From Haliotis rubra (taxonomy: Eukaryota), in NCBI RefSeq assembly GCF_003918875.1, contig NW_025765657.1, positions 1-64,000 on the forward strand: a DNA stretch of 64,000 nt, written 5' to 3'. Shown here one piece after another: positions 1 to 64,000 of this stretch. The first letter of the stretch is position 1. Every line of letters begins with the position of its first letter. Under the pieces are notes generated by a model, which was given only the letters and a program-made list of their open reading frames with translations, was not told the DNA's origin and ran no database searches. Made by a program: the position numbers and the translations under genes.

Positions 1-1380
1 ACACTTCTCCTACATAACGGAAGCTGACCGCTTGTCGGCATACATTCAACATCGTGAAAACTATCGACAGCCATGCCATGTGCTCATGGTTACAGTCTGA
101 CCTTTAGAAGCAACTGAAGCTGACCATTTGTGACACTACATTCACCACCACGCTGAAAATTATCAACGACCATTCCATGTACATGATTGCAGTCTGGCCT
201 TTGAAATTACAATAAAATCAACTTCTGGGGTCAGCGGACAGGCTAGCTTTGCGAGCACCAGGAAGTCACACGGGAATCTAAACATCAGCCCTCCAAGGTC
301 CGCACCAGCTGTCTGCTTGAACATATCTGTTCGCGTAAAGCGCGAAGTCATGGTGATACAAATGACGGCGGTAAATGCCTTCAAAATGGTGGTCAGTTTT
401 AATGACTGGATGGAGGTGCTTTTAATAAACATAACAGCTTATACTATTTCACTTAATCTGGCTGTCACATGTCTCTTCAGTTACATTGCTCGGCGAGCAA
501 GCGGTTCTGTCTTCTGGTAGTAGTGGTGCATAGACTGCACTCCATTCACGCACGCAATAATCATATGCGGGCCCACCAGTGGTTTTGTTGCTAGCAGCTA
601 CAGTGTTTAGTGCAGATTATGGCAAAATAAATACTCAGAACTTCGAGGTTGTTCCTTGTGTGCCGTCACCAATGGCGTATTTTAAACTGGCTAGTGATGA
701 TACCTTTGATTTAACAAAATGCGCTCTGATATTTTCACAGCTTTTGACCTAATAATGTAACTAATTTCCCCTCATATGCATTGTGAAATATTAATTCTGC
801 GTTTGAAAAGAGATTTTGTTATTAGTGAACCTCGAGTCGGCAAACTCATAAAATAATTGAATAATAATCACAGACAATCAGGTCAACCTGAGAGGTCACA
901 CACACCTGGGTTGGAAGGAGACTCCCAAAGGGGGCTTAAGGGTTCAACAGTCGATTAGGTCACACAAAGGTCACACATATGTGACGTCTATAAAATAGCC
1001 GACAAAATGCCCTCCACACACACACCCTTACAACAAGTATTATTTTACAATATTCCTCACAACCACACTGACATACTATAACAAATACTATGCTTGAAAG
1101 AATATTTAGGAAAACATTATCGAAATCATGTAATAAAAGATAGTAGGATTGCTATAATATTTTGGTACTGCATGGTAATGATATAGAATACCATTATTTT
1201 GTTCGATGTTTTGCAACATTTTCAGTTCCTGGTTAATTTTTAGCTTTCGCTAATATTCAGATTGGAATAAAAAACAATTAGACTCCTTTAAGTAATGAAC
1301 ACAAAAGATTATATGATTTGCTTTTCATCAAAAAGTTTCATGGAATCCCATAAGCTGTTGACTACGTAACATATACTTAC

Positions 1381-4300
1381 TATTCTTCTCTGAATGCAAA
1401 ATGTTAAAGCGATGAACAACCAGAGAGATGTGAAAAACACTGGAAACATCATTATTAGCCCATATCGCTCTTTCGAATGTGATTACCATCACCCCAGGAT
1501 TAAAGTAGCGATTCCCGCTAGAGGAGGATCGTGAGGTTGGCACACAACATGCTCCGTTGTCTGAAGGACTGCACACCAACAGATCGAATGATGTCCATCG
1601 ATTAGCAAACTCATCTGGTGGCACCTGCACAGAGCGTAGCCCAAGAAGGAACAAGTAAATGCCCAGATGAATAAAGTGTGGCTCTACGTAGAATATATCT
1701 AAACGTGCATATTTTGAAAAGAAGTGCTTTGATTACGCCTTACAAAGGGATAAACAATGTGAATGTGTTGCCCGGAACACTACAGATATCCTTCACTGTG
1801 TTTATCCATGGGATATGAAAACCTATGAGTCCTGATCGGCAATATAAACACCCATCACAATAGAAAAACACATCTGAACACCTGGTCTCCGGTAGATACC
1901 TGACTCTCATCAACATACACACACCAGGATGCTGGGTGTCGGCAACATACGCACCTGGATGCAGATTGTCAGCAGCATACACACACCATGATACTGGGTG
2001 TCGCAACAAACAAACACCTGGATGCTGGGTGTCAGCAACATATACACACCTGGATGCTGGGTGTGGTCGGCATCATACACACCTGGATGCTGGGTTGTCG
2101 GCAGCATATACTGGCTGGATATTGGTGTCAGCAGCATACGCACACCTGGATGCTGGGTGTCGGCAACAAACAAACACTTACCTGGATGCTGGGTGTCGGC
2201 ATACGCAACTGGATGCTGGTGTCGCCAGCAAGCAAGCGCACCGGATGCTGGGTGTCAGAGCATGCACACAACTGGATGCTGGTGTCGGCAGCATACGCGG
2301 ATGCTGGGTGTCGGCAGCAGACGCACGCACACCGGATTGCTGGGTGTCGGCAACAGACACACCTGGATGCTGGGTGTCGGCATGCACCTGGATGCGGGTC
2401 GGCAGCGAACACACCTGGATGCTGCAGATTGTCGGCAACATACGCACCGGATTGCTGGTGTCATGCAGTCACTGGCTGGATTGCTGAGATTGTCGGCAAC
2501 ATGCACACCGCGATGCTTGGTGTCGCGGCAAAACACGCACCGGATTGCTGGGTGTCAGCAACATACACACACCTGGATGCTGGGTGTCGGCAACGAACAC
2601 ACCTGGATACTGGGTGTCAGCAACATGCACAACTGGATACTGGTTGTCCGGCAACTTATACACACCATGATAGCAGTTGTCAGCAACAAACACACACCTG
2701 GATGCTACGGGTGTCGGCAGCATGCACACACCTGGATACTGGGTATCCAGCAACATACACACGCCTGGATACTGGGTGTCAGCAACATACACACCTGGAT
2801 ACTGGGTGTCGGCAACATACACACCTGGATACTGGGTGTCAGCAACAAACACATACCTGATACCGGTCGTCAGCAACATACACACACCTGGATACCTGGT
2901 ATCAGCAACAAACACACACCTGGATACTGGGTGTCAGGAACAAACACACACCTGCATATCTGGTATCAGCAACAAACACACCTGGATACCTGGTATCAGC
3001 AACAAACACACACCTGGATACTGGGTCTTAGCAACAAACACACACCTGTATACCTGGTATCAGCAACAACCCTAGATACTGGGTGTCGGCAACATACACA
3101 CACCCTGAATACTGGGTGTCAGGAACTACACCTGGATTCTGGGTGTAGCAGCAAACACACCTGGATACCGGGCCTCAGCAACAAAAGAAACACCTCTGTA
3201 TAACGGGTCTCAGCAACAAACACACACCTGTATAACCGGTCTCTCAGCAACAAACGCACACCTGTATAACCGGCATCAACAACAAACACCAACTGATACT
3301 GCATCTCAGGAACAAAAACACAACTGGATACAGGGTCTCAGCAACATACACACCTGATACAGAGTCTCAGCAACAAGCAGACACCTGAATACCACAGGTA
3401 TTAACAACAACACCTGGTCACGGTGTCAACTAACATCTACCCACCTAAATGCTGGGTGTCAGGAGCACACACACACCTGGATACTGGGTGTAAGCAACAA
3501 ACACACACCTGGATACCGGGCCTCAGCAACAAAAACACCTCTGTATAACGGGTCTCAGCAACAAAACCTGTATAACCGGTCTCGCTTAACAAACACACCT
3601 GTATAACCGGTCCCAGCAACAAACACATGCACTAGACATAAAGAAGCGTTATCCACCTACGCTTTGAATTGAAAGTACCAAAGATTTTTGAAGGGTTTTG
3701 GTTTACCAATGAAAGCAATAACACAGCTTTATGCAAATCACGAAAATAAATTCTCAAATGCATTCTAAAGTATTTGGGTGAAATGCATCTTTTCCCAGAA
3801 GAGTTTGGTGTCTATATTCGTCCATGCCGAATTAAACCGAATTATAGTGATGTTGATGTCCAAAGGTTGAAATTAAATTCTGCTTTGGGACAATGATAGA
3901 GCCATTTAAGTCACCATTTTTCAACGCTATTAAAACAAGAAGCAACTGTTGTAGAGTTTTCTTTTGTAGAGATTTGTAAAATAATCATTGCTATGATTTT
4001 TGTCTTTTAAAACGTTTTCTGCTTTGTTTGCATTGGTGAAAACAAGTGGAAGCCTGTCTTTGATATTGGCGAAAACATGTTTGAACATCTACAATTATCT
4101 TTGTTGCTGTTTTTGCTTGCAGGCTAACGTTTTCTGTTCCGTTTTACGCAGTATCAATCCTTGGAAGCGGCAATATTCAGGCAATTGTTGCATCCGTTTC
4201 ACATGGAATGGTTGTATGGGGTATAAAGGCCTAGAAGACATGATCTGATGCACAGGTGCGAGGAAATGTGCTATTAACGGCTGAGGGAAGGGGTCAATGG

Positions 4301-7300
4301 GATTGGTGCGGATGGGATGGGCATGCGTGCTGTTGCCAGCCATCGGATGCCGTTATCTGGTTAAGGAGCGTGTTTGGGGCTTCAGACGGGCTGGGATCAC
4401 CGTAGACAGACCAGAAATTGGACGTCCGCATCCACAACGCCAGCTGAATGGGGTACCTCCGTCATTAAGGAAGGAGAATCAACGTTTCTTTGGCGTTTAG
4501 TATCACCTGTATATCTCTCGTATCGGCAACAAACACACACCTGGATATATGGTATCGGCAACAAATACAGACCTGATGCTGGGTCTCAGCAACATAAACA
4601 ATCCTGGATGTTGAGCTGAGCAGCATGCACGTACCTTGTAGCGCTGGTATATCAGAAAGATGCAACACTTGAACACCCGTATCAGTAACAAAACATACAG
4701 ACACTATGCCAGTAACGGCTCGGGTATAAGGGTCCTCAACTGTTCTCCCAAAGGGACACTTGAAGTTGGAAGATAGCTCAACCAACGCATCCATATTTCC
4801 TAGAGACAAACAATTTAGTGAAGTGATCTTCTCTATCAGAATAACACCACTATCGCCTCAGCTACTTTCAACGTATAATGACAGCTGGACCGCGCGTGCA
4901 TGTAGGATTCATGTACAGTTTTCCACAGAAGTTATTGGGAAAATCTTTTATAGTAATGCACAATAACAGGTTAAAAAGGTGTTACATTTATGCTATACAG
5001 GTGCTCCGGTAGCGGGAGGTATCGCGAAGGCTTGATGAGTGAGACCTTACTAAATCAACAGATATATACCTAGTGTGGCAGGCAACAGCTGCTTGTTGAC
5101 ATGTAAGGTCTGACAGCAAAAGTAGGCAAAGAAACTCGTTCTAGTTTGGTTTTGAAAGGGATAAGACAATGCAAAAGAGTTAAAAGCTGGTAGACACTGA
5201 AGCATTCCCTCGGTCTACAATATATACTGAGAACTTTGAAGAATATTCAGTCAGGAGTTAGGAGTTAGAGCACAAGACAGGGCTGGAAAGGCCAATAAGT
5301 TTAAGTAAGTACCTGTGAAATATCGTAATAAAATTTACAAAATATGTTTAGTTAAACATTGGTGCCAAAGAGGAATAACTCGTTTTTCTTTAGCAGTATG
5401 CAAGAGCATAAAGAGGGAATAACTCTCGAGAGTTTGTGAAGGACAACGAAAGGTTGTAATGGTTTTCTGAAATAAAAGGTATAACTACACACAACTGCAC
5501 TGTATACGGATCGCCTGCAAAGATTTACCTCTAAAATAATAAGGTCATCTATTGCGTAGAACAAGGCGCTGACACGGTTGAATTGCGATGAATAAATGAA
5601 CGTAAACTCATTATGAGCAGTGAGGTGTAAGTGTCTCCGAAAGAATGTCAGGCTTAAGCGCGCTGACAGGTGCCATCAGTTCGACATGTTTTGGAAGGTA
5701 CATGTCGTTTGTAAACTGTGGGAAATGAAAACAAAGAAAATTGGTGAGTTACCACTACAAATTCAGGCAGGGATTTTGGCTCGGAATCGAAATCCACGAT
5801 TTCGAGCTTCCGAAACCAAGCTAGCTCAAAGTGCAGCTTCGACTTTTGTTGCTGTATGTCTTGTTCCAGTGGAGTGGAAATCTATTGGCGAAAATATGTG
5901 CATACTTCAACTGGGATAAATGCAGTGAGGCATTGTTGGATTCAGCCCTGGAAACGACTTGGTGTGTTGACCTCGTTACATCCCTTTCCTTTTTATATGG
6001 TACTATGACCCCACGATGGTGACGGTGATTACCACCTTGACGGCAGTTTTAAGCGATTACAAGCCTGTAAATTCCCTCACAATCGATGAAAGAAAAGAAA
6101 AGGAATGTTTAAACTAATTGTGAGTGCTCCTGCGAGAAATCAAAGGGTAGGAATCCATGTTTTTGTTTTTTGATGAGAAAGATTCATGTCTGTGGCTTTC
6201 CGAACTGTGTGAGATTTGGACAAAGATGCCGTGAGAGCCGATCTGCATAACACCAAGAGCATGTCGAGGAATTTAACCGGTGGGTTGGGATGTCGCATTG
6301 AATTGGCCTTGGATTTGTTATTGTTTTCGTTGGAGTTTGACGAGAGACGATATGTTGAACATCTTGAAGTGATCCGCTCCTTCCGGCGGTGAGATACTGT
6401 ATGAAGGTGAATTGGATTTAAGATTTTGATAATGCGGGCAGCACAAAACAGTGGTTGTGGCACGAGAATGAGTGTTCCAAATTTTAAACTGGCCCAGCTA
6501 CAAGCACAGATCTTGCCCTTCAATGAGAATGTGCGGGGACTAATGAAGAGGGCAGAATAAACCAAAGAGGACTTAGACATGTTGAGATGAACAGAGAAGT
6601 GGTCGAATATCGGGGATGCAGCTGTCACGCAATTTCATACCAAACTTTCATGGGTATGTCATGTATTGCATGGAAAGGAGGTCCTCACAAACTACTGAAA
6701 AGACACTTAGACTGTAAGAGGAATCATATCCTCAAAATATTCGCTTGAGTAAAGGCGACTATAGTTTACATGCGTATATTAGATATTTGCCAAAACAACT
6801 TTATCGATATTTCCTGGGAATACTATGAACAGCTTCAAGGTTCGTTGATTTTTAATGTACGATGAAAATGTATCAACAATATCATTTATCAGTAACTGAG
6901 TACACATTTAGCATACGTCGGATTAGTATCATTCATTAGGACAAGTACATTATGCCTTACCGTTATAAAGGCTGCCCTTACCGTGACGAGGCTCGATTCT
7001 CAATTCTTTTGTACCCGTCAGGTCTACCGCGTGCGGTCCTCTAAAATGGTATATAGGTTCAGGTTCCAGTAAATTTAAGTAATTTCCGCGACATATTCCA
7101 TAAAAAGTATACAGATTGAGATGATATGAGAAATAAGATTTTATCCATTTCTTTTGAGCAAAATGTCCAATTGCTATTTAATTGAACAAATATAGTGATT
7201 TATTTGTATTGGGGAAGATAATATTATGGAGATGCCAATAGTATTTAGATCAGCGAGTATCAACTAAAGAGTGGTTTAAGATTTCAGGATCAAGGAAACA

Positions 7301-9229
7301 CACAGCACAGAAACTATAGGCCCCAATGAACCGCTGCCACCAGTCACGCCAAGCCAGGAGTTGCGTCAATGCTTGGGGTGAGGAGTCTTGATACTGTCGG
7401 GTACAAAGCAACGCTTCCGCCATCACTTTCCCCACCAGCAACTGGCTCTCCTCCATACTCAGGATCATCCCCATCTCAATCTCAAACATGCACCAGTGAT
7501 GGCTCTGAATGAAGTCCTGGAGACAACTTGCCAACACAAATCTTCTCAGACAGTCGGATGTGTTCAGTGATGTTTTCAATATTCTGCTACCTCCGTGAAA
7601 GTCTCTCCTCGTGCATGCTGCATCTACCGAAGCCCATCTCTGCTTGACTCGGGCGTCTGGTGACCTCCTCCACCCACTCTCTGTCGGAGATTTCATAGGA
7701 GAAGACGTGGGTACCTCTTTCCTTGAAGGCGGAGGGACGGCACTTGTCCGTGTGTGATTGGATGTTCGGATTAGTCACGCGTTTATTATCTCACCGGATA
7801 AGGAGGCTGGGTTAATGCGTCTCCTGTGCCTGTAGGTGAGTGGGTAGAGTGAGTGAGTGGGGTGAGTAAAAAGGCAGTGTGTAGCGTGGGCAATCAGAAC
7901 CCTCACTCTTTGCGCTTACTAACACTGTGATGCCCACCGCCATGTTTATTGCCGGTGGGGTCATTATTGAGTCATCTTAAGAAGAAGATCACTAAAAGGT
8001 TGGTTTAACGCTGAACCGAACAAGCTTTATAACGGTCCTGCTTCATATGGTGAACGTCGGCAGAAGCAATCTAGGGTCTGAACCAGTGATCAAATGTTTC
8101 TGTCAGCAGCCCGGCATATCTTTTACCCATCAAAAGAAAAATTCAAATCACCCTATGTGTAATAAAGAGTTCATTGAAGATCCTGTTCGAAATGTGTTAT
8201 TCAACTTATACTAAGTACGTCAGTTGCATGCTTGGAGACTGCTGTCTTTGCATCTCGATTGGGACAGTTGGCATGCACGGCCTGTGGTTATTTTTCGAGA
8301 TTTTGAGATATGTTTCGTTCTTTTTGGACTGACTGACTGACTGAGTTTGGTTTTGCATACGCTTTTGGCAATATTCCGGTAACATCACGGGGACGCCGAA
8401 ATGGGCTTCACGCATTTGTGCCCGTGGTAGAGTCGAACCCGGGGCTTCGGCGTGACAGGCAACCTTTAACCACTAGGCTACCCCACCGCCCTCTTTTGCG
8501 AAGCATTTATTCCCTTGTGTTTTATTTCGCAGTACTCACCATTGAACGCCTGGTACATCGACATTTTGATACTGGTTAATAATAGCACATGATAGTCGAC
8601 TCTGTCTTTGTTGGAAATTTCCTACTTTATGGAAAATCAATCTTGTATTATTCCCCGAAGCGCATTATATGCCTTCATAAACGAAATATGCATGTAGAAA
8701 CTACATTTACCGCTGCCCATATCCCGGTATAGGATGTCTAACGATCTTTACCTGCTCTAAAAGATGGAACAGGTCTAGAGTGCATGTTTTCGATACTGGC
8801 AGAAGGTAGCGAAGTGGCCATCGTGACAAGTGGAAGTAAATACGCTGTCAAGGTCACTGAGATCCTGAGTTACTGTAATGTTGATGCTGAACGAATGGGG
8901 TTACGTCTTGGGATGTCCAAAGGAACTGGATCAGCAGTCGTCGCATCAGGAGAAAAACGACTTTTCTCACAGTTGGTTCGTGTTCTTCTTCCATTATTTT
9001 CTTTCCAATCTGTCGATCTGGACATTCGTGCTGAGGAGCAATGCTCATCCCTGAGTCGATACCCGTCGTTGCTTGATGTCATCACCGGGGCCTCTAACAT
9101 CAACACCACATCCAGCCTAGATTCATCCGAGAGATGGACCCCGAAGAGGCTGTGGAAGAGGGTGATACGGGGATTCTTCGGGATGGATCCATCCTCTGGT
9201 TCTGATAGCGGAGAGGGTAAAGTGTCCAT
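1381..9229 (-). pseudogene. Copy A of the TIR-TM gene, exons 1-4, frameshifted as given (pseudogene or consensus errors); continues off the window start
   Basis: Mirror exons ~8752-9229, ~7304-7829, 4699-4799, 1381-1624. TIR peptides (YEISDREWVEEVTRR, ERDFHGG, WCMFEIEMGMILSMEESQLLV) are split across frames by many small indels. Confidence 0.75.
1905..3630. repeat. 31-32 bp minisatellite array (mirror copy, ~1.7 kb)
   Basis: Unit ~CAACATACACACACCTGGATACTGGGTGTCAG; explains the repetitive ORFs at 1740-3628. Confidence 0.97.
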
Positions 9230-12200
9230 CGTGTCTGAAGGAGAGAACCAGTCTTATTTACTGTTGGCCAGAATCAATTTAATTTCTAGAAAAGTAAACG
9301 AAATTTAGTCTTATTCCATAACCATCTAATGTCCTTCATTATTTACTTTTTGTGAATGTATTGACTGTTGTTTCATACCTCCATTTTATCGTTAAATAAT
9401 CAAGATTTCATACAGCAATAATACGAAGCTTAACAAAGGTTAGGAGGATTTTTGATTGAATAGCCTCCCTTCTAGTTTACAGAAATACACACACAAAAAA
9501 CGATCCACGTGGTACCGAAAAGAGGCTAATTTTGTACTTTCGTTCTAATAACATTGACCTTCATTCTCGGCCAATACCCTACAGAAAAGCAGAACAGCAA
9601 GCATAGGCAATTATCATAAAGTCAACACTTGGCAACATCGTCTTTCAAATCAATTTCTTTCAAGCAACATATTCCCCTCATACCCGTGGTTAGAAATGAC
9701 TATTCAGGGTACAGGATATTGCTTGCGATGTCATAAATATAAGTCGCTTCAAAATATGGGGTCCCTTGATAAATTTCACTCATTTCGGGTATATATAGCG
9801 GTATAAACTTCACCAATAATGGTGCCGCAAATGGTGGCTTGATGTTTCAGAATTGAACTGTCGATACGTTGATATAAAGTTTCCTCATGGAACGGATGAC
9901 AAGCTTGATTAAACATTAGAGGCAAATGTGTTTACCCAATTAAAGAAGTGGCGAAACGGTTCTTTCGTATGATAGTATTTTTCAGTTTTCGCATGTTGCC
10001 TTGGCATCATTGGTCCCTCTGGAACAATTAAGGTAATTTTACCCGAAGTATGGTTTTCAGATTTAACATATATCATTTTGAAAATCATATGCAAAGGAAG
10101 CAAAAGTCGGCGCATCCCATCTAGATCAGCAAAATGCCTGTTCAACAGTAACAGCTCCGTGCTTTACATCAAAGTATCAACAAATACTTCAAATATATCT
10201 GGAATGCTGTTGAACTATCATTAAAATCACAATATAACAAAAAGCTCTTAAGGGTATGGTGGAAATAACTTACCAAAAGCGAAAACGAATCATATGTTGA
10301 GGTATGAAAAAAGAATAATAAATTTTCCATGTCATTAAAATGCTTCAAAGTGCTCATCGAAAGATTGAGTCCGTCCTGTCACCATAATGCAGTATCATTT
10401 CTACATATAATTTGTTATCTCTTTTTCTTGCTTGATAGAGTGCGTTTCCGGCTGACGTGTCGGTGAATGTCACTAAGTTCAAAATCGCAGTATGTTTGCG
10501 GGTCTACACCCACATGCAGAAGTACACCACAGGTTCAGCCTCTTACTTCACCTTCCTGTTCTGTTGACTTTTGGTGAAGAAGGCCCTCGGAGTGCTGGAG
10601 GTCCATCAGTAAAGACAGGTTTGCATAAATTGTCCCACCCATATACATGGCATGGTGACAAATTTTACTATTCTTCTGATTCTTTAGAACTGTAGGTAGT
10701 GAAAAGTATTAAACAGGCCTCATCAGAAACTTTAAATCTCAAATATTTATCGAATATATTTTTAAAATCTTTAATCCTCGCAAAAGTACGAGCATGACGA
10801 GGGCCTGTGGCTATGGGCAGTCTGTTCCTGGGTGTCTTTCGACACTGAGTAACACAACAGACCAGGGAACCAGGCTGGACCCAGATTTGACAAAACCACT
10901 CGTACAGAGTCATGGAAGACTACCAACCAAATCGTGCAACAACCTTAATACCTAAAAAATAGATCTTGGGCTGCTCCCAAAGTGAAAGAGTGCTGTAAGA
11001 GTGAACAAACAACCGACACAAAGATATTTGAATATTTATTTATGTGTACGATATCAGGCATATGTATGGTATTTACCATCCGGACTAGAATCGTCTCTGA
11101 GAGAATGCCTAGTACACCAGAATTTTGAGCAGATACTCTGCTCTCAGTAAATCTCCACAAGAGCAGCGCCACAGTCGGCTAGCCATTCCGACGCTAGAAA
11201 CACCTCACAGTAATGCATACTATGCCAAACGGAATAATAGTTCAATAACAGACTAGGTTTACTAAAAGACGTCCTTCCTTTTAAAAATCATGAAAAAGTC
11301 AAAGGTTATTCCAGAATGTGTGATAAATAAATTATTAATTCCTTTCTTTACCATAAACAACATCATGTAATTAAGGTCCATGCTGATGTAAAACCAATCT
11401 ATTTAAAATCAGATCATATTCATTCATAAAGTGAAAAGTATGACATGTAATGAGTAATTGTATTTCGATATCAGATTAAATATATATACTCTACTGTGAT
11501 CTTTTAATTGTTGAGATTTACGCTGAATTAACCTGCAAAGTTAAAATGAAATAGAAAAGTACAAATAACTACCTCTTACATCTATTGGGCTTCGGATGTG
11601 TGTCAACTGACATTCGGAGTAAGTGGACCAATGAAGCGAAATAGACACATGACATAGCAATCTATTGGTTTATGAAGACACAGTCCCTGAAGCATTAACT
11701 TGACGAAGAAGAGAATCCTGCAATGGCACTGCGAGTTGTTCGTGGCTGCCATTTTGATCGAAACGAAGCGGGATGCCAGACAGTCAGACCGGGTGGGTGT
11801 GCGCTCAGGGTGTAACGGCTGGTTTGTTGCAGATGCCCTCACGGCTGTTATTGTTGTTATGTATGAGATGTTGGGTTTTGTGTGCGTGCTGGTGCACGGT
11901 GGTATGTGTTTTGCAATCGGCAGACGAAGCATAGCATGTCATGTGTTCCAGAATTATCGCACTTGCCGCGCGATGTATTGGCAGTGCATAATGTGACAGA
12001 GACCGAGACTTCGGTTATGAAATCAATGCATTTTGTAGTTGTATGTAAGCTGATTGGTGTTAAGTTCAGATTGCGGGTGGTCGGTGATGGCAGCTATTGT
12101 GATTGAATATTGTGATGCCAGACGGGCGGGGAGACGCACCGGGTGTCGTAAAACAAGACGTGAGGTTTTGTCGCTGACAGCGGTATATCTGATATCACAG

Positions 12201-53404: not shown

Positions 53405-54120
53405 TGTGTCCCCGTGACCTTGAAAAATATGTCAAGGTCACCAAAAACAACAGTGATCCCTGCACCTTCTCTAGATGAAGTTTGGTGTCAAGTATGAAAA
53501 GAAATCTAGTGAACTGTTTTTGAGATTTATTATATGCTAAACAGTGAGAAAAGTGCTCATCACTACAGTGAGATATCGCTTTTCTCATCACTGTGAAAAT
53601 ATCACAAAGAGGATGATGTAACCTGAACATCAGCGGTTGATAAGTGACAGTGCAACAATGGTATGATGACATCAGAAACAGCTAAAGTGGACCAATATTG
53701 ACTTATCATACCTCATTTTCCATCAATGAAGCATATAATAAGCAATAAAATACCCTCTATATCTCGCTGACTTTAATAAAGTGTTAGCTCCCTTGTAATC
53801 TTGAAATGGTGAAACCTGACTGGGACCTTTCTCATACCATTTTGACTGACTGACTGACTGAGTTTGGTTTTACGCCAAATACTGGTCTTCACACATTCTA
53901 CTCATGGGGGGATTCGAATCCGGGTCTTCGGCGTGACGAGCCAATGCTTTAACCATTAGGCTACCCCACCGCCCCCATACCATTTTGTACCTAGGTACCG
54001 AATATGAAAAGAATCTAGTTAATGGTTCCAGAAATATTCCAATTTGTTTGTATGGACGGACGGATGGACAGAACCTAATACCCTCCGCTTCATGCTAAAC
54101 TCACGGTGGGGGGGTAAAAA
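53405..54120. mobile_element. Non-autonomous Helitron/Helentron-like remnant
   Basis: GTGACCTTGA..TCAAGGTCAC hairpin, (GGAC)n microsatellite, then a GC stem-loop and A-tract; interrupted by a SINE. Confidence 0.45.
53845..53975 (-). mobile_element. tRNA-derived SINE family 1 copy with 12-bp TSD
   Basis: TSD CATACCATTTTG at 53833-53844 and 53976-53987; internally deleted body. Confidence 0.88.
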
Positions 54121-54202
54121 TATCTTTTAAGATAATCGAATTTTACAGTGTAAAGCACTGAACTAAACAAAATACAGGTCATCTTGAAACAACAAAGTTT
54201 GA

Positions 54203-57200
54203 TCAAACTGTAACTTTGGAAAGGTAGTGGGATAGAGAATTTACTATCTTCTGAGAACTTGTTACCCTGCATTTGTTCTGGTACTTTTCAGCAAACACAT
54301 TGGATAATCCAATATCTCCCTGTCTCTTGTAAACTACTTTCAAGTGGTCAAAGCAGAGACCACTAGAGGCTATCTTTCTGGCCATATTTGTAGATAAAAC
54401 CTTTTCACACACAAGGTGTTGAAGGCTTGGAAGATTAGCTTTTATAGCTTTAGACCGTGCCAAGGAGTCTGTACAGTACTTCACACAAAAAGTAGATTGG
54501 GTCTTTGCATCAAGAGAAGCATGACAAGTTGAGTACAGCTGTTGCAATGACAAGGCATCTGACAAGGCATCATGTGCAACATAGTCACTCCCCAAAATAT
54601 TTTTAAACAACTCAACCCGAGCGTATGAATTAAGTCCAGGATTTGTCAATTTGAATAGCTTAAGTGTATCTAGAAAACCATGTACATGATTTGAAAAATG
54701 CGGTATGTAATCAATGGCAAGTAATGCATTGAAAAGTAATGGACAATCATATAACTTGATATTGTGCCCAACCAGAACATTGCCTTCACTTTTGCTAAGA
54801 AAGCAAATCAGGTCTCCAATAACCGTCTTTAAAGATACAGGATAAACTTCTTCACTGTAGTGAAACATCCTTCTCCCCTCAACACGTATGCCTGTGACCT
54901 GTGCAGCAGCTGGAGTAATCTGTACCTCGGGTACAACATAGCGGTTGAATCGTTCTTCACCCCGGACTGCAGCTAACTGTGTCACATGAGATGTTCTCGC
55001 TATAAGAGAATAAAGCAAGACATAAGAAGACATATAAAAAAAGTACTTCTTTTAATAGGTGTTAAGCAACCCCCCCACCCCCACCCTGTAATATCCTTGT
55101 ATTATTGATTACACAAATAATGCCAGAACACTTATTAGATATTTAGATCAAATATATATATTTATGGAGCACAATTTTAAACATTCATGTATAAATGCAT
55201 TGTGAGTCTAACTTTTGCAGGGTAGTAAATTCAAGATCTTAATATTCAAATATATCTTACAATGCATAGTGTCCTCGTCAGGATAAAAGTCAACAGATAT
55301 TTTTTATATCCGTTGGGGTCATATGCGGGTATCGATGCAAATTAGAGAGATCAAATGCCTCAACTTCTTTTCAAAATCCTTATGAAGTCACTCTATTGAA
55401 TATTTGAAACGCCAAGCAAAGTGTGTCAAAATTAATAAACATGGTAAAATATAGCATCTATCAAAATTTAAAAAACATTCGTAATATCTCCAAATGGGTT
55501 CCTGCTCCTATTATCTATCATTCACCTGTGTTTCTCTGAAATGGATTAATGTGCACATTTCAGGGCATTTTCTATCAGCTACATAATGTTGCAGGTCATT
55601 TAGTGGTAATAGAAAAGAAGAACGACATGGTACGATAACACAAGCGTATTTTGGGATGGTAAATAGTATTAATTCCTAATGCTAGGTATTTACCATCCCA
55701 AACCTGATTCGTGTGATAATCTCTATTTCCATTTCACTTGTATTTTACATACCTAAGCCAGTAGTTTCAAGATCAAAGACTATCTATGTGGTGTTGTTAA
55801 GCTGAAGTGGCTCCTGGACAGGTACAGGAAGTGGTGGAGGAATGCTAACTAGGTCATCGGTGTCAGTCTCCTCAGACATGTCAACCATGGCAGAGTACGT
55901 CGTACCTTCTCTGACTTCTTGAACTGTTCGCTTCTGACTTCTGAAACAGATTTATGAAAAACTATTATGTAGGTCAATAGTCCAATGAGTATGATGGTTA
56001 CATATCTGTAGACTACTTCGTTCTTCATTACGGAATATAGGGCCTCAGAGCATTACATCATTAACAATGTCTTTCAAGACGGACCAAGTTCTTGTATCCT
56101 TCTCTATCATGGTAGAATATGATATATATAAATTTCTACTAGAGTGAGTGAGTATGATTTTACGCCACTTTTAGCAATATTCCAGCAATATCACGGCGGG
56201 GGACACCAAAAATAATTTTCTACTTGAGGTCAGAGTTAAAAGCTGACATACCTCATAACCTTGAGATGTAATCTATGCTGTTTAGCTTTAATCGTTGATG
56301 CAATAGCCTTTCGTTTGCGATGCTGAAGATCTTTCAGTGTGAAATGCTGTCTGGTATAGGTCCCAGGTGACAGTCCAAGAGTCCTGTTAACCTGTAGAGG
56401 AGGATTATCAATTATTAATAAATGGTCATGAAGTTTCCTTATAACTTTAAGGCACTTAGAGTGTTACACATTACACCATTGATTAACATAAGAATTCTTT
56501 TAAGCCACTAAAGAATAGGAATGATTTTTCATATATATTTTTGCATATCTGAGACCAGGATAAAAGTAGCATAAAACAGAACAAAGTAATTTAAGAGGGA
56601 CCTCATCATCCCTGTAACCATTAAAGAATTAATAGTATATTGTCAACAATCATGGGCCATAACTTTTCAATTCAAACTTAAATCAGCTTTACTTTATCTT
56701 TAATCTTTAACCACATTCCCCTTCCTAAGGACTTCAAATAAACTGAACTGGAACTATAGAACAAGACACATTTCAAATTCAACTTCTAAATGATTTTAAC
56801 AAAACTGAACTGGAACTGTAGAACAGAATACATTTCTAATTCAACTTCTAAATGATTTCAAATCAACTGAAATCGAACCATAGAACAGAATACATATTTC
56901 TTACAGCTATAATATAGCTGTGGCCCACATTCTTTTGTGCAACGGAAGCAGCAACCCTGAAGTGAAGACTTGAGGAGCCAGAATAATGTCTAGATTTTGG
57001 TGCCTTGCTAGACACGGTCTTGTTAAAACGATCATTGGATTGTGTGCTTCCAAGACTGGCAAGTCTTACTTTGTGTATAGCATAGTTGTCAAACAAAGCT
57101 TTTAGGTCTGCTTGTAAAGTCAAATCTGACAGAGCTTTACCATAAGGAAGAGACCTGAAGCTTGAGCTTGACGACATCAAAAATCTGCACCAAGTGTCAT

Positions 57201-58260
57201 CACACTTACTGTGATCACCAAATGGGTGACATGATAGTGCAGTTAATCCTCTGCTTATTCCATCTTGGTTTCCTTTGTTTTGGCTGATCATGTAGTTGAA
57301 ACATTTTTGTAGATACCTGATTACTTTGGTGCTCAGTGTCTTGTGTTTTTTCTGCAGCTGATACAGTTTATTACCTAAGCCTTTCCTCACATGATTTTTG
57401 TCAGACTGTTTAACAATGTCCTTGTCTACATTTGCCCTTAATCTGGCTATACTTGTAGCATCATCATCTCCTATGATTGAGGTCACATGTACATCCTCTT
57501 CCTTAGCTTTAACTACCATCTCAGATACCATGTCAGGTTCCATACCTTTACTGGAACCATCCCAGTTCTTTCTGCAGTCATGCTCTTCAGGAATCCTGTT
57601 AGCTTTATTTGCTTGATGACAGATTCGGCAACTCTTTGAGCGGATCGAATAGCCAAGAACTTTGCCAGTTTTGTTCCCGATCATTGAGCAGTGTCCTGAA
57701 ACATATAAATGTCTGTTTATTTATTTCAATTTTCTGCTTGAATATGATATATTTATTTTAACAAGTTTAGCTCTAGTGTCTTGATATTATCTGACCAAAA
57801 CACAAACCCATCAATAACACTGTTACATGTCTTGTAGTAGTCAACATACTGGTCTGAAGGATAAAGTAAAACAAGGAAATAGAACTAATATAACTGAGAG
57901 TTTAATAAATCACAAACATAAAAAATAATGTGACAATGGTTACTTTAATCATGCTGTGAACATTTGTACTATTGAAATCTAACTAATTGAAAACACATCA
58001 ACACAAAACCCAGATCTTAAAACCTTTTTCATCTGAAATGATGCCAGAGAAGGTACCACTTATCACTTTCAAGAAAACATATTGATACATTTACATCATT
58101 ACACAGAGAGATATACCTAATAGTCTTGTATTATGCATAAGTATAAACAAGCAACTAGAATTAGAATGAATTACCAGACAGGCTGTCATAGCATTTTCCA
58201 CTGCCCCGCTTCTGCCATCCTGCATCAACACTCACACAGATTCTTCGGCTGCCGGGAGAA
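54203..58260 (-). pseudogene. 5'-truncated spliced gene: Mutator-like/Kolobok-type DDE transposase fused to DEDDh exonuclease and PML-C-like tail
   Basis: Exons 58175-58260, 56905-57695, 56252-56391, 55753-55940, 54203-54999, all GT-AG and phase-compatible. Transposase motifs VDAGWQKRGSG, CxxC..HxC, GMEPD, IGDDD, DKNH, HPFGDHSKCDDTWC, TQSND. Exonuclease motifs FDLETTG, GHNIKLYD, FLDTL, AHDALSD. One in-frame TAG at 55784-55786. Confidence 0.85.
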
Positions 58261-61200
58261 CTGAAGAAGAGGAAAAAAACATGATGTTGCAATTTCATTT
58301 TAAAAACAGTTCACTGGATTTCTTTTCATACTTGACACCAAACTTCATCTAGAGAAGGTGCAGAGATCACTGTTGATTTGGTGACCTTGACATATTTTTC
58401 AAGGTCACGGGGACACATTGAAGATTTCAGCAGATCTTCACTATCATTCCTCTTTAATTTTGAATTGTCACCTTAGGAGATTATGTCACCTTAGTATATT
58501 TGAATATGTGCACCTAGTTGTTTCATGTAAATGAGATCATTTTGCTTGAATTTAAAAAAAATATCATGCTTTAGCTGATTAATCATTTGCAAATACATAC
58601 AAATGTTATTGTTTATTGTGGAATATATGTTTGGCTTCAATACAAGCCCAACATTTTGTTATATCCACAACACCACATGTTTTTATGTGATAGTGTAAAA
58701 ATCATGTTGAAATAACAGATTAGCCTTCCTAACTTATTGATATCTATTTACCTTCATGAATTGTGATATAGCTCACTGATTACTTTATTTATTATAACTG
58801 GCTTATTGAATATATTACCAGGACGTGTTAATACTTTTTTCATTTATAACATAGATGTGTACATAGCTGTTACATCAAGTGATTATAATGCTAAACTTTT
58901 ATATCCAAAATGTTATGTATAACTTTAAAATCAAATGTACATGTATGTATGATATGAAATAAAAAGTACAATAATGTAATAAATGTAACATTTCATTGTT
59001 AAGATTGTGTGTGTTTTGTTATTTAAAAATAATATTATTAAATAATTACTCCATTGAAAATATAGAGTCTAGAATGATATAACCATTTCAGTCAATGGTG
59101 AATTATGCCCAGTGTGTCAAAATTTCTTAACTCTTCACCTTTTCGCTTAAAATATCAGATAAATGTTAACATGGATGCACTTAAGCTAAGATATTTGAAT
59201 TGTCAATGCAGTAAGTCATTCAAATATTTGAGGAAAAACTATTTAAGCCACATATATCTTTAATTTTATCATGAAAATTACATAACATTGGTGCAAATAT
59301 GTAATATAATGTTACACATTGTGTCATAGTGGAAAAATACCCTCAGTAACCCATGTTTTTTAATACTTATTTTTATGGCAAAACATGTTGTCATTAACAT
59401 ATCGGAATTTTTTTTTAAATTAAATACTAGAAATTATGAAAATGAGGGATCATGTCAGAACTTTGCTGATTTTCCCATAGACTCCCATGTTAAAAGTCTT
59501 GGCTTGCCAAGGATTCTTCAAGACTCCATATCTCCAGAAAACCCACAGTACCCCCTTCTTTTCTGGGCTGTTTTTACAAATACAAACGTCATACTTTAAA
59601 AATATACCAATTAGAAAAAAAGTTTAATACTATTTATTATAACCCACTGAGTTACCAGCTTGATATGGTGTTGAGCTACCATGCGTAATGGCAAGCCATT
59701 TTTACATTTATTGAGAAATTGAGATATTGTATATTGTTTTAAAGATATCTTTATCTAACTGCAAGATACCAGCAACTAAATTACAGATATCATTAAAACA
59801 TGTATTTGTACGTCTTTAAATCCTACTCTGATATCATTAAACCAATTAAAGATATTAGCAATTCTTTTTCAAGGTATTAATGAGTTTCAATATGTCCTTA
59901 TTTCATTTCGCGATGTCATGAATTGTATCGCAGATAGCTGTAATTATCCCTATGTTTAATTCATTTTAAGATATCCTAAATCCAATTCCAGATATCTTCA
60001 ATTCAATTCTAGACATTTTCATTCAAAATATATTAAGGCAATTGAAGATATCTGTACTTTATACTTAAAATGTGAAAATGTCTTGCCATAATGCCATAGT
60101 AAACTGACTCAAAGCCGAGCACACTTTGTGCAGTCACCTTAATGCCGGACACCTGCAGGTTCATAATTAGTACCGTCGTTTAACGTCCTTTGTAATGACA
60201 CAGCCGTAGATCGAGGCCACGACCTTTCGCTGTCCGCTTCATAAGGCCTCTATCTTATCATCATGAATCTAACCGCTGTCATACAGTATCAGGGCTCCAG
60301 ATAAGGGCCGTATCGGCGTATGTACGGATATAAAATATGCACGATACGGTAGGAAATAATTTAGAAAACGTAGCAGATACGCACCACAGCAATGTTGCAC
60401 GGTCATAGAATCATTTACAGACGTATTTAGCTGAAAAAATATTGTTTTATTATTTATTGACCTTTTTACACAAGAGTAGCTATGTTGTGGTGCATATATG
60501 AAACGAAACACAAGATTACTGATCCGCCATTAAATTCCATTCAGTATTCTAAATGTACTCCTAAGGTTTTCCAGTACTCCTATATTGAAAAAATAAGGAG
60601 TACGTACTCCTGATGTTGAAAAATTATCTGGAGACCTGCAGTAGTGTGCACATAGTAATGAAATTGGTCGATCCTGTCAGTTGTCGTATATCCATGCTTT
60701 TTCTTTAATACGAGTCCATTATTGCACGTTTATCTACTAGGGGTGGGTATTGCAGAGAATTTTCATATTGCGATATATTGCGATTCGAAAGCATATATTG
60801 CGGGGCGGTGTGGTAGCATATTGCTGAAGCGCTAGCGTTCGCCTGTCACGCTGAAGACCGGGTTCGATTCACCACATGGGTACAATGTGGGAAGCCCTTT
60901 TCTGGTTTCGCTCGGAATTTCGGTTGATGTTGTTGAAACATTGCCAAAAGCTGCTTAAAACATTGCTCCCTCATTCATTAGGTCGAAGACAAAAGTTCTA
61001 TTCCATTCATGACTACAATGTGTAAAGTCCAGTTCTTGTGTTCCCAGTCGTGATGTTGCTGGAATATTGCTCAAACATGATGGACGCTTGCGTAAACACA
61101 CAGAACAACAGATTTTGATTGTCCGGATAACTGAACATATTTAATGCATATTTTACCATTTGAGCCATGAAGAGGGCATCGAGACCATTAACCTGATCAA

Positions 61201-61869
61201 CTTATTCCAGTTTCAATGAATGTCTTCTGGATAGCAGGGTTTCTGGATAGCTGACGTCCGTTTTAGTGAGGACTCGCTGTAGGCAGAGAGACAGACAGAC
61301 ACAAAGGATTTAACATGTGGTACATAAGATTTATTACATGTATATCTATACACTGTACGCGTATGTTTTTTTAAAATATGTAAATAGGTTCGGTCATGGG
61401 ATAATGAAATCAGGGATATACAAGCAAATACAAAGGATATATTCCATTTTCATTAAGTGCCGTGGATTTTGGGGTGTATGACGACAGGATTATTGAGAAC
61501 ACAGTTTAAACTGTTGACTGCGTTGAACGCCGCTTTGGATTGTGTTTATATCACGATGTTGTGGCTTACTGTGGCGATGCAGTCCTAGGGTGTTACCACG
61601 TTCGACATGTTTTTGTTCAACGCCACTCTCATCAACATTCTAAAGTGACAGATCCTGACCACTTATGTCATATGACAAAGACAGGTTGTTGGGACTAATT
61701 CTTACTGAGAGACCTCGGGGAAAGGGGACCACAGTAAATGAACTGACGTACAAAAGAAAGTACACTATGGTGTTTTCAAGTTTTGGCAACGCGTAAACAA
61801 CGTTTGTGACATGTGAGTCAAAATCAGAATATTTTTCAAACAATTTACGTTATTTTACAAAAAGCCTTG

Positions 61870-62092
61870 GTCTTCATCAATCCATGCTTGTCGCAAGAGA
61901 CGACTAACGGGATCGGGTGGTCTGGCTCGCTGACTTTGTCGACACATGTCATCGTATCCCAACTGCGTAGATCGATGCTCATGCTGTTGATCACTGGATT
62001 GTCTGGGCGAGACTCGATTATTTACAGACCGCCGCCATATAGCTGGACTATTGCTGAGTGCGGCATTGAACAACCAACCAACAAACCAACTA
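61870..62092 (+). mobile_element. SINE family 2, 5'-truncated, Nin-domain-like core; mirror 49800-50020
   Basis: Core CATGCTTGTCGYAAGAGRCGACTAACGGGATCGGGTGG, 3' end shared with family 1, (CAAC)n tail. Other copies at about 12425-12612, 18406-18635, 22697-22921, 25545-25790, 28440-28625, 47883-48105, 63725-63950. The Nin label is from memory. Confidence 0.8.
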
Positions 62093-62498
62093 CGCTCAAT
62101 GGAAACTGAAGGCTTTAAAACTACATGTATATATAAAATGGAGGGCGGGTAGTTCAGTAGAGAATGGGGTCACAATTCATTGGGAGAGTCACAGGTTCGT
62201 CAGACATCTAAGACTTCTTTGATTGGCATTAAGACATTGTCGGTTCGAAACAAAGCTTCTTTCTCCCTATGTTCTTGCTTTGTCAGCAATGTCGGTTTTA
62301 CCAAAGTAGGTAACCGTCTAATCACGGCAGTGATATTACTGAAATTTTATAATCTGTTTTAAACTAAACTATCACAATCGAAAACATTCAAACTGGTACA
62401 TAAGAAAGTAAGACCTGACACAGAGTGTGTTTTTGTACATAAAGGAGCATTGTGTTGCTATCCTGGGAAATCACAATGCCATAAAGCATGGATTTACT

Positions 62499-63698
62499 TC
62501 ATACGATCATGAGAGGGAGACGCTGGCCCTCTGAGTACTTGTCCTCTACAAACTGACAAAGGCAGATGGCGTTGCGGACGTGCCTAGGGCCATGTTTGAC
62601 CTTGAGCTGACCTTCCTTGTAAGCGGAAGTGTAGTCAAGGCAGTGGTGTTGAAACAGCTGCGATGCCTGTGAAGACAAGTTGATCCTTACAGTATTGTGG
62701 CAAAGTTGAATTACAGTATTTTGAAGGCAACGAATTGACCTACGGGTGGATTTCACGCAGTCTTAAGAATATACTAATATAATGGCAACCTATGTATGCT
62801 CCTTGGCCCCAGATAAGACGATCTTGTTCATCGACTAAAAGGCAACTGACTGCATCTCCAGCTCAGCCATTACAAGAGCATCCTCTGCCCAACCCAACTA
62901 TTACATCTCCAGCCCAGCCATTACAAGAGCATCTTCGGCCCAACCCAACTATTACATCTCCAGCCCAGCCATTATAAGAGCATCCTCGGCCCAACCCAAC
63001 TGACTGCATCTCCAGCCCAGCCATTACAAGAGCATCTTCGGCCCAACCCAACTGACTGCAGCAGCAGCCCATTTTTTTGTTACAGCATCCCTGGCCCAGT
63101 CATCACTAGAGCATCCTTGGCCCAAGCCCCACTGACTGCATCCCTGGCCCAGTCATCACTAGAGCATCCTTGGCCCAAGCCCCACTGACTGCATCCCTGG
63201 CCCAGTCATCACTAGAGCATCTTCAGCCCAATCCTAAATGACTGCATCTCCAGCCCCGCCATTACAAGAACATCCTCGGCCCAACCTTAAATGACTGCAT
63301 CTGCAGCTCAGCCATTACAAGAGCATCTTCGGCCAAACCCTTACTGACTACATCCTTGGTCCATTCTTTTCCAACAGTATCCCTGGCCTAAGCCTTAATG
63401 AGAGGATCACTGACCCAACTCAACATTGATTCACTGAATTCATTTGCAGTCACAAAAACATGGAACATTAATTTTGAAAAGTTGTTAACGATTTTACGAC
63501 TGCTTCTGAACGTTTGGGATCGTGATTGTCAGAAATGAGCTGACGATAGTACCCTTCTCCATGAATCATCGATAATGTATAGAGAAGGTATGATTCATAT
63601 ATAATAAACAAAATATATACAGTACTAACCTTGTCTGCATTTGAACCAGATTCAAGATGTCTTCCTTCAATTCCTTCCAGAAAATTTGCCAAAAAGTT
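62499..63698 (-). CDS. Copy C of the TIR-TM gene, last two exons (63630-63698, 62499-62666); the rest should lie beyond the window end
   Basis: Same lengths (69, 168 nt), splice sites and stop as copy B exons 7-8; 5 replacement and 2 silent differences. Confidence 0.8.
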
Positions 63699-64000
63699 CT
63701 GAAAGTAATCAAAACTGTTACGTTTTGGTATGTTTGTTGTTTAACGCTGCACACAACAATATTCCAGCTATACGGCGGCGATGTGTAAATAATCCAGGCG
63801 GTCTGTAAACAATGGACCAGACAATCCAGTGATTGACAGTACGAGCAATGATCTATGGAAAGGGGATACCTCATGCATCAACCTAGTCAGCGATCCTGAC
63901 CACCTGATCTTGTTTGTCGCCTCTGACGACAAGCATTCCAACCTTCACAGGTAAACAGTTACCTGGGGAACGACGAAATACACACTGCAAACATGAGTCA

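What the first reader, a model, noticed from the sequence alone, without database searches (positions are those of the whole stretch)
1..64000. The TIR gene is amplified as an inverted triplication (minus, plus, minus)
Seen: copy A and copy B are head-to-head around a junction near 19.6-21.9 kb; copy B and copy C are tail-to-tail around 53.5-58.3 kb. Established: a centrally inverted triplication is the product of fold-back or template-switch amplification (ODIRA, DUP-TRP/INV-DUP, breakage-fusion-bridge). Inference: this immune gene is expanding by palindromic amplification rather than simple tandem duplication. The alternative is haplotypes joined in inverted orientation by the assembler.
Basis: partly seen in the sequence, partly recalled or inferred. 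Interest (0 to 1): 0.8.

Follow-up and report, generated by a model that had tools for sequence, protein, structure and literature searches.

The report
Mixed-orientation TIR gene cluster, one unreliable copy
The three head-to-head and tail-to-tail copies are in the assembled sequence, but they are part of a cluster of at least four unequal copies on a short, repeat-bounded abalone contig, and the leftmost copy looks like uncorrected long-read sequence, so a one-step palindromic amplification is not shown.

Summary
The geometry is confirmed. Copy A (1-20107, minus) meets copy B (21889-53521 plus a flanking element to 58305, plus) head-to-head. B meets copy C (58302-64000 and on to 83206, minus) tail-to-tail.

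The window is the first half of a 127.5 kb contig that starts and ends inside copies. A fourth copy, D (87-127.5 kb), lies in direct orientation after C, so the order is - + - -. Two further contig ends also fall inside copies.

Copy A is not a trustworthy third copy:
- It nests inside the young B/C/D clade but carries about 11-13% private change (relative-rate test 110:1).
- Small indels are evenly dense, and A>G changes are clustered on one strand.
- All three of its exon pieces that I could compare are broken.
- Deep short-read contigs from both sampled animals hold only 6-7% of its 31-mers, no more than the 8.75% it shares with the other copies.

The genome's size and contig count match a published Haliotis rubra Nanopore/Illumina meta-assembly, so uncorrected read sequence at a contig end is the likeliest cause.

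B, C and D look intact but are a mosaic: the odd one out changes from segment to segment. B|C is a single breakpoint (58302-58305, 4-5 nt of A) inside a multi-copy transposase-exonuclease element. That anatomy resembles a fold-back join.

Verdict: an ordinary mixed-orientation gene cluster in a weak part of the assembly.

The parts
1..20107 (-). Copy A of the unit, cut by the contig start. It runs from an arm of the intron transposon to the upstream end of the unit. The sequence is anomalous and likely poorly corrected.
   Evidence: Collinear with D (108316-124373) and C (71916-83206) at 86-90% identity. Long private branch (0.135 against 0.000 for D), relative-rate count 110:1, evenly dense small indels, clustered A>G on the + strand. 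Only 0.06-0.07 of its 31-mers are found in deep short-read contigs.
7181..7798 (-). Broken TIR-domain exon of copy A
   Evidence: tblastn against B's exon gives 43% identity across frameshifts, with 2 stops.
8747..9229 (-). Broken exon 1 of copy A
   Evidence: tblastn gives 42% identity across frameshifts, with 1 stop.
20108..21888 (.). Head-to-head spacer between A and B. It holds a short unique stretch, a high-copy SINE-like repeat (20439-20651) and a 223-nt satellite (20870-21765).
   Evidence: Very high word depth in the short-read contigs of all three runs, and no contig bridges it.
21889..53521 (+). Copy B: upstream region, TIR gene and 3' flank. The gene looks intact.
   Evidence: Exon 1 at 31549-32037, TIR exon at 32843-33499 (Pfam TIR_2, E = 2.5e-21), open reading pieces at 39753-40097, 46166-46321 and 49181-49387, all conserved in C and D. 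A 70%-identical 285-aa protein from another source joins an exon-1-like part to the TIR part.
36990..39527 (+). 32-nt minisatellite in an intron of B. Counterparts lie in A (1907-3564), C and D.
40409..45764 (-). Transposon remnant with 1.3 kb terminal inverted arms, inside an intron of B. It carries an integrase core and an adenovirus IVa2-like ATPase piece. It is shared by B and D, one arm of it is in A, and it is absent from C.
52187..58305 (-). Multi-copy element downstream of B. It carries a Mutator-like transposase (56863-57684) and an RNase_T/PML_C exonuclease (54203-55033). It forms the B|C spacer. Its left limit varies among genomic copies.
   Evidence: Pfam hits. At least 10 genomic copies at 94-97% identity. 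Left ends fall at 52187, 52271, 53248 and 53287. Four other copies run on past 58305 with a shared sequence that this copy lacks. The same element lies downstream of D.
58302..58305 (.). B|C breakpoint. The element interior is joined to the reverse complement of its own position 53521, with an overlap of 4-5 A residues.
58302..64000 (-). 3' part of copy C. The unit continues to contig position 83206. The last conserved open piece is 62502-62708.
   Evidence: Inverted match to B 53521-47834. 93% amino-acid identity with no stop. C's exon 1 and TIR exon lie at contig 72094-72585 and 71151-71801.

Best explanation
The window is the left half of a short (127.5 kb) contig that begins and ends inside repeats. 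It comes from a draft abalone assembly, most likely the Haliotis rubra Nanopore/Illumina hybrid meta-assembly. It samples a multi-copy cluster of units of roughly 25-40 kb, each carrying a TIR-domain gene. The contig order is A(-) B(+) C(-) D(-), and more copies sit at other contig ends.

B, C and D are real, apparently intact paralogues. They differ by 2-10%, differ in transposon content, and their kinship is mosaic. This is what a tandem gene family looks like after older duplications and exchange between copies (inferred).

One unit, B, is inverted. Its tail-to-tail join to C is a single breakpoint inside a Mutator-like transposase/exonuclease element. The anatomy is that of a fold-back or template-switch join, or of a palindrome whose centre was later deleted (anatomy shown, mechanism inferred). 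The event is old, not ongoing.

Copy A is not an old pseudogene. It is a D-like copy carrying about 10-13% private, error-like differences. The most likely cause is a raw or poorly polished Nanopore read overhang at the contig end (inferred). Its broken frames and its junction with B therefore cannot be used as evidence for a triplication.
For: Contig layout and the fourth copy.

Other contig ends inside copies: C2075 starts inside one, and the 4,961,153 bp contig C2744 ends inside one.

Intact exons in B, C and D against broken exons in A.

Mosaic kinship, as odd-one-out counts (B/C/D): far upstream 15/6/71; upstream 135/15/13; TIR-exon segment 8/62/6; intron 22/101/20; 3' flank about equal.

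Anomaly of A:
- Sister to D, with branch 0.135 against 0.000.
- With the C1158 copies as outgroup, A nests in the clade that differs by 2.3% or less, yet has a branch of 0.11.
- A young 540-nt repeat sits at the same unit position in A, C and D. It is 97-98% identical in C, D and more than 30 other genomic copies, but 77% identical with 27 gap openings in A. The Tajima count is 110:1, p = 4e-25.
- About 8 indel events per 250 nt, evenly spread (variance/mean 0.7). A>G affects 11% of A residues on the + strand against 2.7% for T>C, and is clustered (variance/mean 4.75).
- Runs from one study and two samples, whose contig totals are about genome size, hold 0.06-0.07 of A's sampled 31-mers, while 0.0875 of A's 31-mers are shared with B/C/D.
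- Contigs laid on 19.6-20.1 kb differ mainly by gaps, whereas those on B mostly have 0-2 gaps.

Assembly method: G000 has 1,378,282,171 bases in 2855 contigs. The published H. rubra assembly has 1,378,265,264 bp in 2,854 scaffolds. It was built from wtdbg and DBG2OLC assemblies merged with QuickMerge, polished with Racon and Pilon, using two animals (PMC6774278). A protein from contig C2744 is named Haliotis rubra by NCBI.

B|C breakpoint.
Against: No long read or contig bridging either junction could be examined. The laid contigs are 700 nt or shorter at low-copy depth.

The short-read contigs also differ from B by 1-3%, partly carrying C's letters. They collapse copies or come from other haplotypes, so the test by 31-mer share lacks a measured control on B.

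A's profile (substitutions more common than insertions, insertions more common than deletions) is not, as far as I recall, the usual raw Nanopore profile, and I found no documented source for the A>G bias.

The junction topology (B bounded inside the limits of A and C at both ends) is what a two-switch inverted triplication predicts.

The mosaic kinship of B, C and D could also come from an assembler switching between copies.
Confidence: 0.55

Rival explanations
1. The whole arrangement, including the B|C join, is an assembly artefact. The true locus would be a direct tandem array (or fewer copies with haplotype and individual variants) that was mis-stitched by the hybrid meta-assembly of two heterozygous animals.
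For: The contig is short and begins and ends inside repeats. Three other contig ends also fall inside copies. The assembly merged two assemblies made from two animals, followed by haplotig purging (PMC6774278). False duplications are common in such assemblies (PMC9516828). Kinship is mosaic. The short-read contigs match no single copy exactly. The closest paralogues elsewhere are direct tandems.
Against: The B|C join has no shared sequence across it apart from 4-5 A residues, so an overlap-based misjoin is unlikely. The arms differ by 2-10%, have an ordinary substitution spectrum, intact exons and different transposon content, so this is not a template/complement fold-back read. C is too different from B in the intron and in the membrane-segment exon to be an allele.
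Confidence: 0.2
2. This is a genuine inverted triplication, made long ago in one replication-based event with two template switches (DUP-TRP/INV-DUP or ODIRA-like). It was later blurred by gene conversion with neighbouring copies, transposon gain and loss, and a further tandem duplication that gave D.
For: The order is - + -. B is bounded on both sides inside the limits of A and C. A runs 478 nt further upstream than B (19630-20107 matches C 82725-83206). C starts at the equivalent of B 53521, whereas B runs on to 58305. There is microhomology at B|C. In the 3' flank B, C and D are equidistant at about 2%.
Against: Copies made in one event should be each other's closest kin, and they are not. 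C lacks the intron transposon that A, B and D share. A's sequence is not usable as evidence. The spacers are 2.3 and 4.8 kb, against under 70 bp for ODIRA loops. The fourth copy is direct.
Confidence: 0.15
3. Copy A is a real genomic copy that underwent strand-biased, clustered hypermutation (mainly A>G on the contig + strand) after duplication in inverted orientation.
For: The A>G changes are asymmetric and clustered. They depend on the 3' neighbour: the rate is 0.16-0.17 before G or C against 0.07 before A or T.
Against: Evenly dense 1-2 nt indels accompany the substitutions. A's private 31-mers are missing from the short-read contigs of both sampled animals. A sits at the extreme end of the contig. 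There is no depletion of G 5' of the changed A, which to my knowledge is typical of ADAR editing.
Confidence: 0.04

Closest known systems
Fold-back inverted duplication with a single-copy spacer (own knowledge, e.g. human inverted duplications; related template-switch models in PMC10766186 and PMC10766183)
   Same: The B|C pair has two inverted arms starting from one breakpoint, short microhomology, and a kilobase-scale stretch present once between the arms.
   Different: The arms are not sister copies along their length. The event is old, with 2-10% divergence. The breakpoint lies inside a multi-copy transposase-exonuclease element. No terminal deletion can be assessed.
ODIRA inverted triplication (PMC4689423, PMC10766183)
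   Same: There are three copies with the central one inverted.
   Different: The junction loops are 2.3 and 4.8 kb, not inverted repeats of about 7 bp less than 70 bp apart. The copies are unequal. One copy is unreliable. A fourth copy lies in direct orientation. Whether an origin is included is unknown.
DUP-TRP/INV-DUP complex rearrangement (PMC11293582, PMC4352052)
   Same: The middle inverted segment is bounded inside the limits of the flanking copies, so short stretches next to each junction are present twice rather than three times.
   Different: No normal haplotype is available for comparison. No pre-existing inverted low-copy repeat was identified at a junction. The copy ages differ.
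False duplications and unpolished contig ends in long-read or hybrid assemblies (PMC9516828; assembly method in PMC6774278)
   Same: Copy A sits at the contig end, carries error-like private differences, is missing from short-read k-mers, and is closest to another copy on the same contig.
   Different: A is not a plain duplicate of its neighbour B, and it is not a mirror image of B. A 2.3 kb non-palindromic spacer separates them.
Tandemly arrayed invertebrate TIR-domain gene families
   Same: The copies share a Pfam TIR_2/TIR exon. There are several close paralogues, with direct tandem pairs (C-D, and two on contig C1158).
   Different: One member is inverted. The link of the TIR exon to the downstream membrane-segment exons rests on the other first-stage note and on conservation, not on a transcript seen here.

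Membership tests
ODIRA inverted triplication | Three copies with the central copy inverted | tested here: met
   A(-) B(+) C(-) within the window. However, a fourth copy D(-) follows, and A is unreliable.
ODIRA inverted triplication | Junctions at short interrupted inverted repeats (about 7 bp, less than 70 bp apart), leaving only a small loop | tested here: not met
   The spacers are 2,259 bp (19630-21888) and 4,780 bp (53522-58301). The definition is taken from PMC4689423.
ODIRA inverted triplication | The three copies arise together, so they are equally related | tested here: not met
   A is sister to D on a long branch. The odd-one-out counts among B, C and D are mosaic. C lacks the intron transposon.
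ODIRA inverted triplication | The amplified segment contains a replication origin | not testable with these tools
   No origin data are available for this animal.
DUP-TRP/INV-DUP | An inverted middle segment flanked by stretches present twice | tested here: inconclusive
   The topology fits. Copy number against a normal haplotype and the reality of A could not be tested.
Fold-back inverted duplication | A single inverted breakpoint with microhomology and a single-copy spacer | tested here: met
   This holds for B|C only. The breakpoint is at 58302-58305 with an overlap of 4-5 A residues, and the spacer is 4.8 kb.
Fold-back inverted duplication | The two arms are each other's closest relatives | tested here: not met
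   In the gene body B pairs with D. In the 3' flank B, C and D are equidistant.
Breakage-fusion-bridge amplification | Continued alternation of orientation and loss of distal sequence | tested here: not met
   C and D are in direct orientation. Distal loss is not testable on a 127 kb contig.
TIR-domain protein (Pfam PF13676/PF01582) | Match above the curated cut-off | tested here: met
   B's exon scores TIR_2 76.9 bits (cut-off 28) and TIR 50.9 bits (cut-off 21.3). D and C are 98% and 87% identical at the protein level. A's exon gives no Pfam hit and has stops.
Uncorrected long-read sequence or false duplication in an assembly | Excess private differences relative to sister copies, including dense small indels | tested here: met
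Uncorrected long-read sequence or false duplication in an assembly | Private k-mers absent from accurate short reads of the same animals | tested here: met
   The runs hold a share of 0.06-0.07, against 0.0875 of A's words shared with the paralogues. Caveat: no measured control share exists for B.
Uncorrected long-read sequence or false duplication in an assembly | Low or single long-read coverage over the stretch | not testable with these tools
   Only short-read contigs were served.

The most novel reading that the evidence does not exclude
The cluster preserves a genuine, old inverted triplication of a TIR immune gene, made by two template switches. One switch lay inside a Mutator-like transposase/exonuclease element. 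The structure was later blurred by gene conversion. This would be a fixed germ-line example in a mollusc of the DUP-TRP/INV-DUP architecture that is otherwise known mainly from yeast experiments and human disease.
Probability: 0.15. Interest if true: 0.45.

Novelty: new member of a known kind. Interest (0 to 1): 0.2.

Why it matters
If the claim were true as stated, it would show an immune gene family growing by replication-based palindromic amplification in a wild animal. What the evidence supports is more ordinary: a multi-copy TIR gene cluster with one inverted member, sitting where a draft hybrid assembly breaks down.

The practical value is a caution. One of the three "copies", with its "pseudogene" frameshifts, is probably uncorrected read sequence. 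Gene counts and evolutionary readings from this contig should wait for an accurate re-assembly. The fold-back-like B|C breakpoint inside a transposase-exonuclease element is worth a junction PCR, but it is not remarkable by itself.

Tried and rejected
- Simple template/complement fold-back read as the source of A: rejected. A is closer to D (90.1%) than to its neighbour B (83.7%), and the 2.3 kb spacer is not palindromic.
- A as an old pseudogene: rejected by rooted and transposon-anchored relative-rate tests.
- The spacer element as a transposon whose terminal inverted repeats explain the arms: rejected. Other genomic copies run on past 58305 with a shared sequence and show no inverted end there.
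- Plain inversion of one unit in a tandem array: it does not fit without extra deletions. The expected element remnants are missing from the A|B spacer.
- The contig's other end as equally noisy: not so. D's far-upstream stretch is diverged, with many transversions and no A>G bias.
- Pfam on the downstream open pieces (39753-40097, 46166-46321, 49181-49387): no family found. I searched exon by exon and did not build or search a joined spliced model.
- Word search with the TIR exon: only two proteins returned. Look-up of the contig that encodes the first of them found nothing on record.
- Read laying: only short-read contigs were served, the region is rich in high-copy repeats, and no piece bridged a junction.
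- Earlier-findings searches for noisy contig ends or hypermutation: nothing found.
Full report
**What is in the window.**
- Window 1-19629 matches 41452-21889 at 79-88% identity.
- Window 47834-53521 matches 64000-58302 at 92-98% identity.
- The spacers are 19630-21888 and 53522-58301.

The window has no N runs. Only one intact TIR-domain exon lies in the window: B at 32843-33499 (Pfam TIR_2, E = 2.5e-21). A second, frameshifted copy with two stops lies at 7181-7798. Inside the window, copy C is only the 3' part of the unit.

**Wider context.** The window is positions 1-64000 of contig C767, which is 127,536 bp long. Reading the rest of the contig shows four copies of a unit of roughly 25-40 kb:

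| Copy | Strand | Contig positions | Note |
|---|---|---|---|
| A | - | 1-20107 | cut by the contig start |
| B | + | 21889-57094+ | |
| C | - | 58302-83206 | |
| D | - | 87195-127514 | reaches the contig end |

- The order is therefore - + - -, and the alternation does not continue.
- Contig C2075 starts inside another copy that is 98% identical to D.
- The 4,961,153 bp contig C2744 ends inside a partial copy.
- The closest paralogues elsewhere, two on C1158 about 20 kb apart, lie on the same strand.
- The cluster is therefore a place where the assembly breaks. Its true copy number is unknown.

**Gene content.**
- Exon 1, the TIR exon and three further conserved open pieces are free of stops in B and D over their likely exon parts.
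- In C, the only stop in the TIR piece falls 12 codons after the point where an annotated relative ends, so it is probably intronic.
- A 285-aa protein from another source joins an exon-1-like N-terminus to the TIR domain. This supports placing those two exons in one gene.
- The downstream pieces gave no Pfam family.
- I searched exon by exon and did not build a joined spliced model.

**Copy A is anomalous.**
- *Tree position.* In a six-copy alignment A is sister to D, with a branch of 0.135 against 0.000 for D. With the C1158 copies as outgroup, A nests inside a clade whose other members differ by 2.3% or less, yet it has a branch of 0.11.
- *Relative-rate test.* A young 540-nt repeat sits at the same unit position in A, C and D. 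It is 97-98% identical in C, D and more than 30 unrelated genomic copies, but only 77% identical with 27 gap openings in A. The Tajima count is 110 against 1 (p = 4e-25). Age cannot explain this.
- *Indels.* A's private changes include 1-2 nt indels at about 8 events per 250 nt, evenly spread (variance/mean 0.7).
- *Substitutions.* These are strongly asymmetric between strands. A>G affects 11% of A residues on the + strand, against 2.7% for T>C. The A>G changes are clustered (variance/mean 4.75).
- *Short-read support.* Three DNA runs from one study and two samples have contig totals close to genome size. They hold only 0.06-0.07 of A's sampled 31-mers. Since 0.0875 of A's 31-mers are shared with B, C and D, A's private words appear to be absent.
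- *Laid contigs.* Those on 19.6-20.1 kb differ from A mainly by gaps. Those on B mostly have 0-2 gaps.

**Likely cause of the anomaly.** The genome has 1,378,282,171 bases in 2855 contigs. The published Haliotis rubra assembly has 1,378,265,264 bp in 2,854 scaffolds. A protein encoded on C2744 is named Haliotis rubra by NCBI. That assembly was made as follows (PMC6774278):
- a wtdbg Nanopore assembly and a DBG2OLC hybrid assembly were merged with QuickMerge;
- polishing used two Racon rounds and one Pilon round;
- data came from two animals;
- Purge Haplotigs was applied afterwards.

The likeliest reading is that A is a raw or poorly polished read overhang. Its reads would have been drawn to the cleaner paralogues during polishing. 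This is inferred; long-read coverage could not be examined.

**A is not a mirror copy of B.** It is closer to D than to B (90.1% against 83.7%), and the spacer is not palindromic. It therefore represents some copy with a D-like gene body and a C-like upstream region. Its adjacency to B rests on sequence that runs through a SINE-like repeat and a high-copy 223-nt satellite.

**The B|C junction.**
- The spacer is a multi-copy element that carries a Mutator-like transposase and an RNase_T/PML_C exonuclease.
- Four other genomic copies run on past window position 58305 with a shared sequence.
- The window's copy instead switches at 58302-58305 to the reverse complement of its own position 53521, across 4-5 A residues.
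- The same element follows D in the same relative orientation. Its far end lies at 83268-83605, next to C's upstream end.
- B|C is therefore one breakpoint with a 4.8 kb single-copy stretch between the arms. This is the anatomy of a fold-back or template-switch join, or of a palindrome that later lost its centre.
- The arms have an ordinary substitution spectrum and intact exons, so this is not a read-level fold-back artefact.

**Kinship of B, C and D.** Odd-one-out counts change along the unit:

| Segment | B odd | C odd | D odd |
|---|---|---|---|
| Far upstream | 15 | 6 | 71 |
| Upstream | 135 | 15 | 13 |
| TIR-exon segment | 8 | 62 | 6 |
| Intron | 22 | 101 | 20 |
| 3' flank | about equal | about equal | about equal |

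- C lacks the intron transposon remnant that A, B and D share.
- C's membrane-segment exon is only 57% identical in protein to B's.
- The palindromic partners are therefore not sister copies.
- This argues against one recent event. It points to an older family with exchange between copies, or to assembly mosaicism.

**Comparison with known mechanisms.**
- *ODIRA* requires an inverted central copy, junctions at inverted repeats of about 7 bp less than 70 bp apart, and an included origin (PMC4689423). Here the loops are 2.3 and 4.8 kb, and the copies are unequal.
- *DUP-TRP/INV-DUP* topology fits, because B is bounded inside the limits of A and C. It cannot be established without a trustworthy A and a reference haplotype.
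- *Breakage-fusion-bridge* is not supported, because C and D are in direct orientation.

**Verdict.**
- The geometry is real in the assembly.
- The reading as an inverted triplication made by palindromic amplification is only partly supported.
- One junction (B|C) looks like an old fold-back-type join.
- One "copy" (A) is probably uncorrected sequence.
- Tandem duplication is also evident in this family.
- No read bridging either junction was seen.
- Interest is low until long reads or an accurate assembly confirm the order.

Noticed in passing
window:40409-45764: Transposon remnant with 1.3 kb terminal inverted arms (94% identical). It holds an rve integrase core (43724-44140, minus) and an adenovirus IVa2-like ATPase piece next to a C2H2 finger (42102-42644, minus). 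The combination resembles a Polinton/Maverick. It lies in an intron of B, is shared with D, one arm is in A, and it is absent from C.
   Followed up: partly
window:52187-58305: A Mutator-like transposase plus DEDDh/PML_C exonuclease element is present in at least 10 genomic copies at 94-97% identity. The copies share a common continuation on the right but have variable left ends (52187, 52271, 53248, 53287).
   Followed up: partly
window:1907-3564 and 36990-39527: A 32-nt intronic minisatellite differs in copy number between units: about 53 repeats in A and about 80 in B. Arrays also occur in C (contig 66771-68787) and D (110264-111961).
   Followed up: no
window:11760-12261 (also contig 75106-75655, 119918-120457, 99779-100320): A young repeat of about 540 nt has more than 30 genomic copies at 97-98% identity. 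It is useful as a clock for dating the unit copies.
   Followed up: yes
window:3640-16340: Clustered A>G differences limited to one strand, more frequent before G or C, with no depletion of G on the 5' side. I read this as read error, but I did not find a documented source for this exact profile.
   Followed up: partly
window:20870-21765: A 223-246 nt tandem repeat shows very high word depth in the short-read contigs of all three runs, so it is a high-copy satellite. It sits in the A|B spacer.
   Followed up: partly
L017 (contig 66299-66622) compared with window:39753-40097: The membrane-segment exon of copy C is only 57% identical in protein to B's, against 82% for D. The residues before the hydrophobic stretch are nearly unchanged. 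This is a locally fast-changing segment or an exchange with a distant paralogue.
   Followed up: no
window:48433-49066 and 62843-63363: A 51-53 nt tandem repeat lies just upstream of the last conserved open piece. It is present in both arms with different copy numbers.
   Followed up: no
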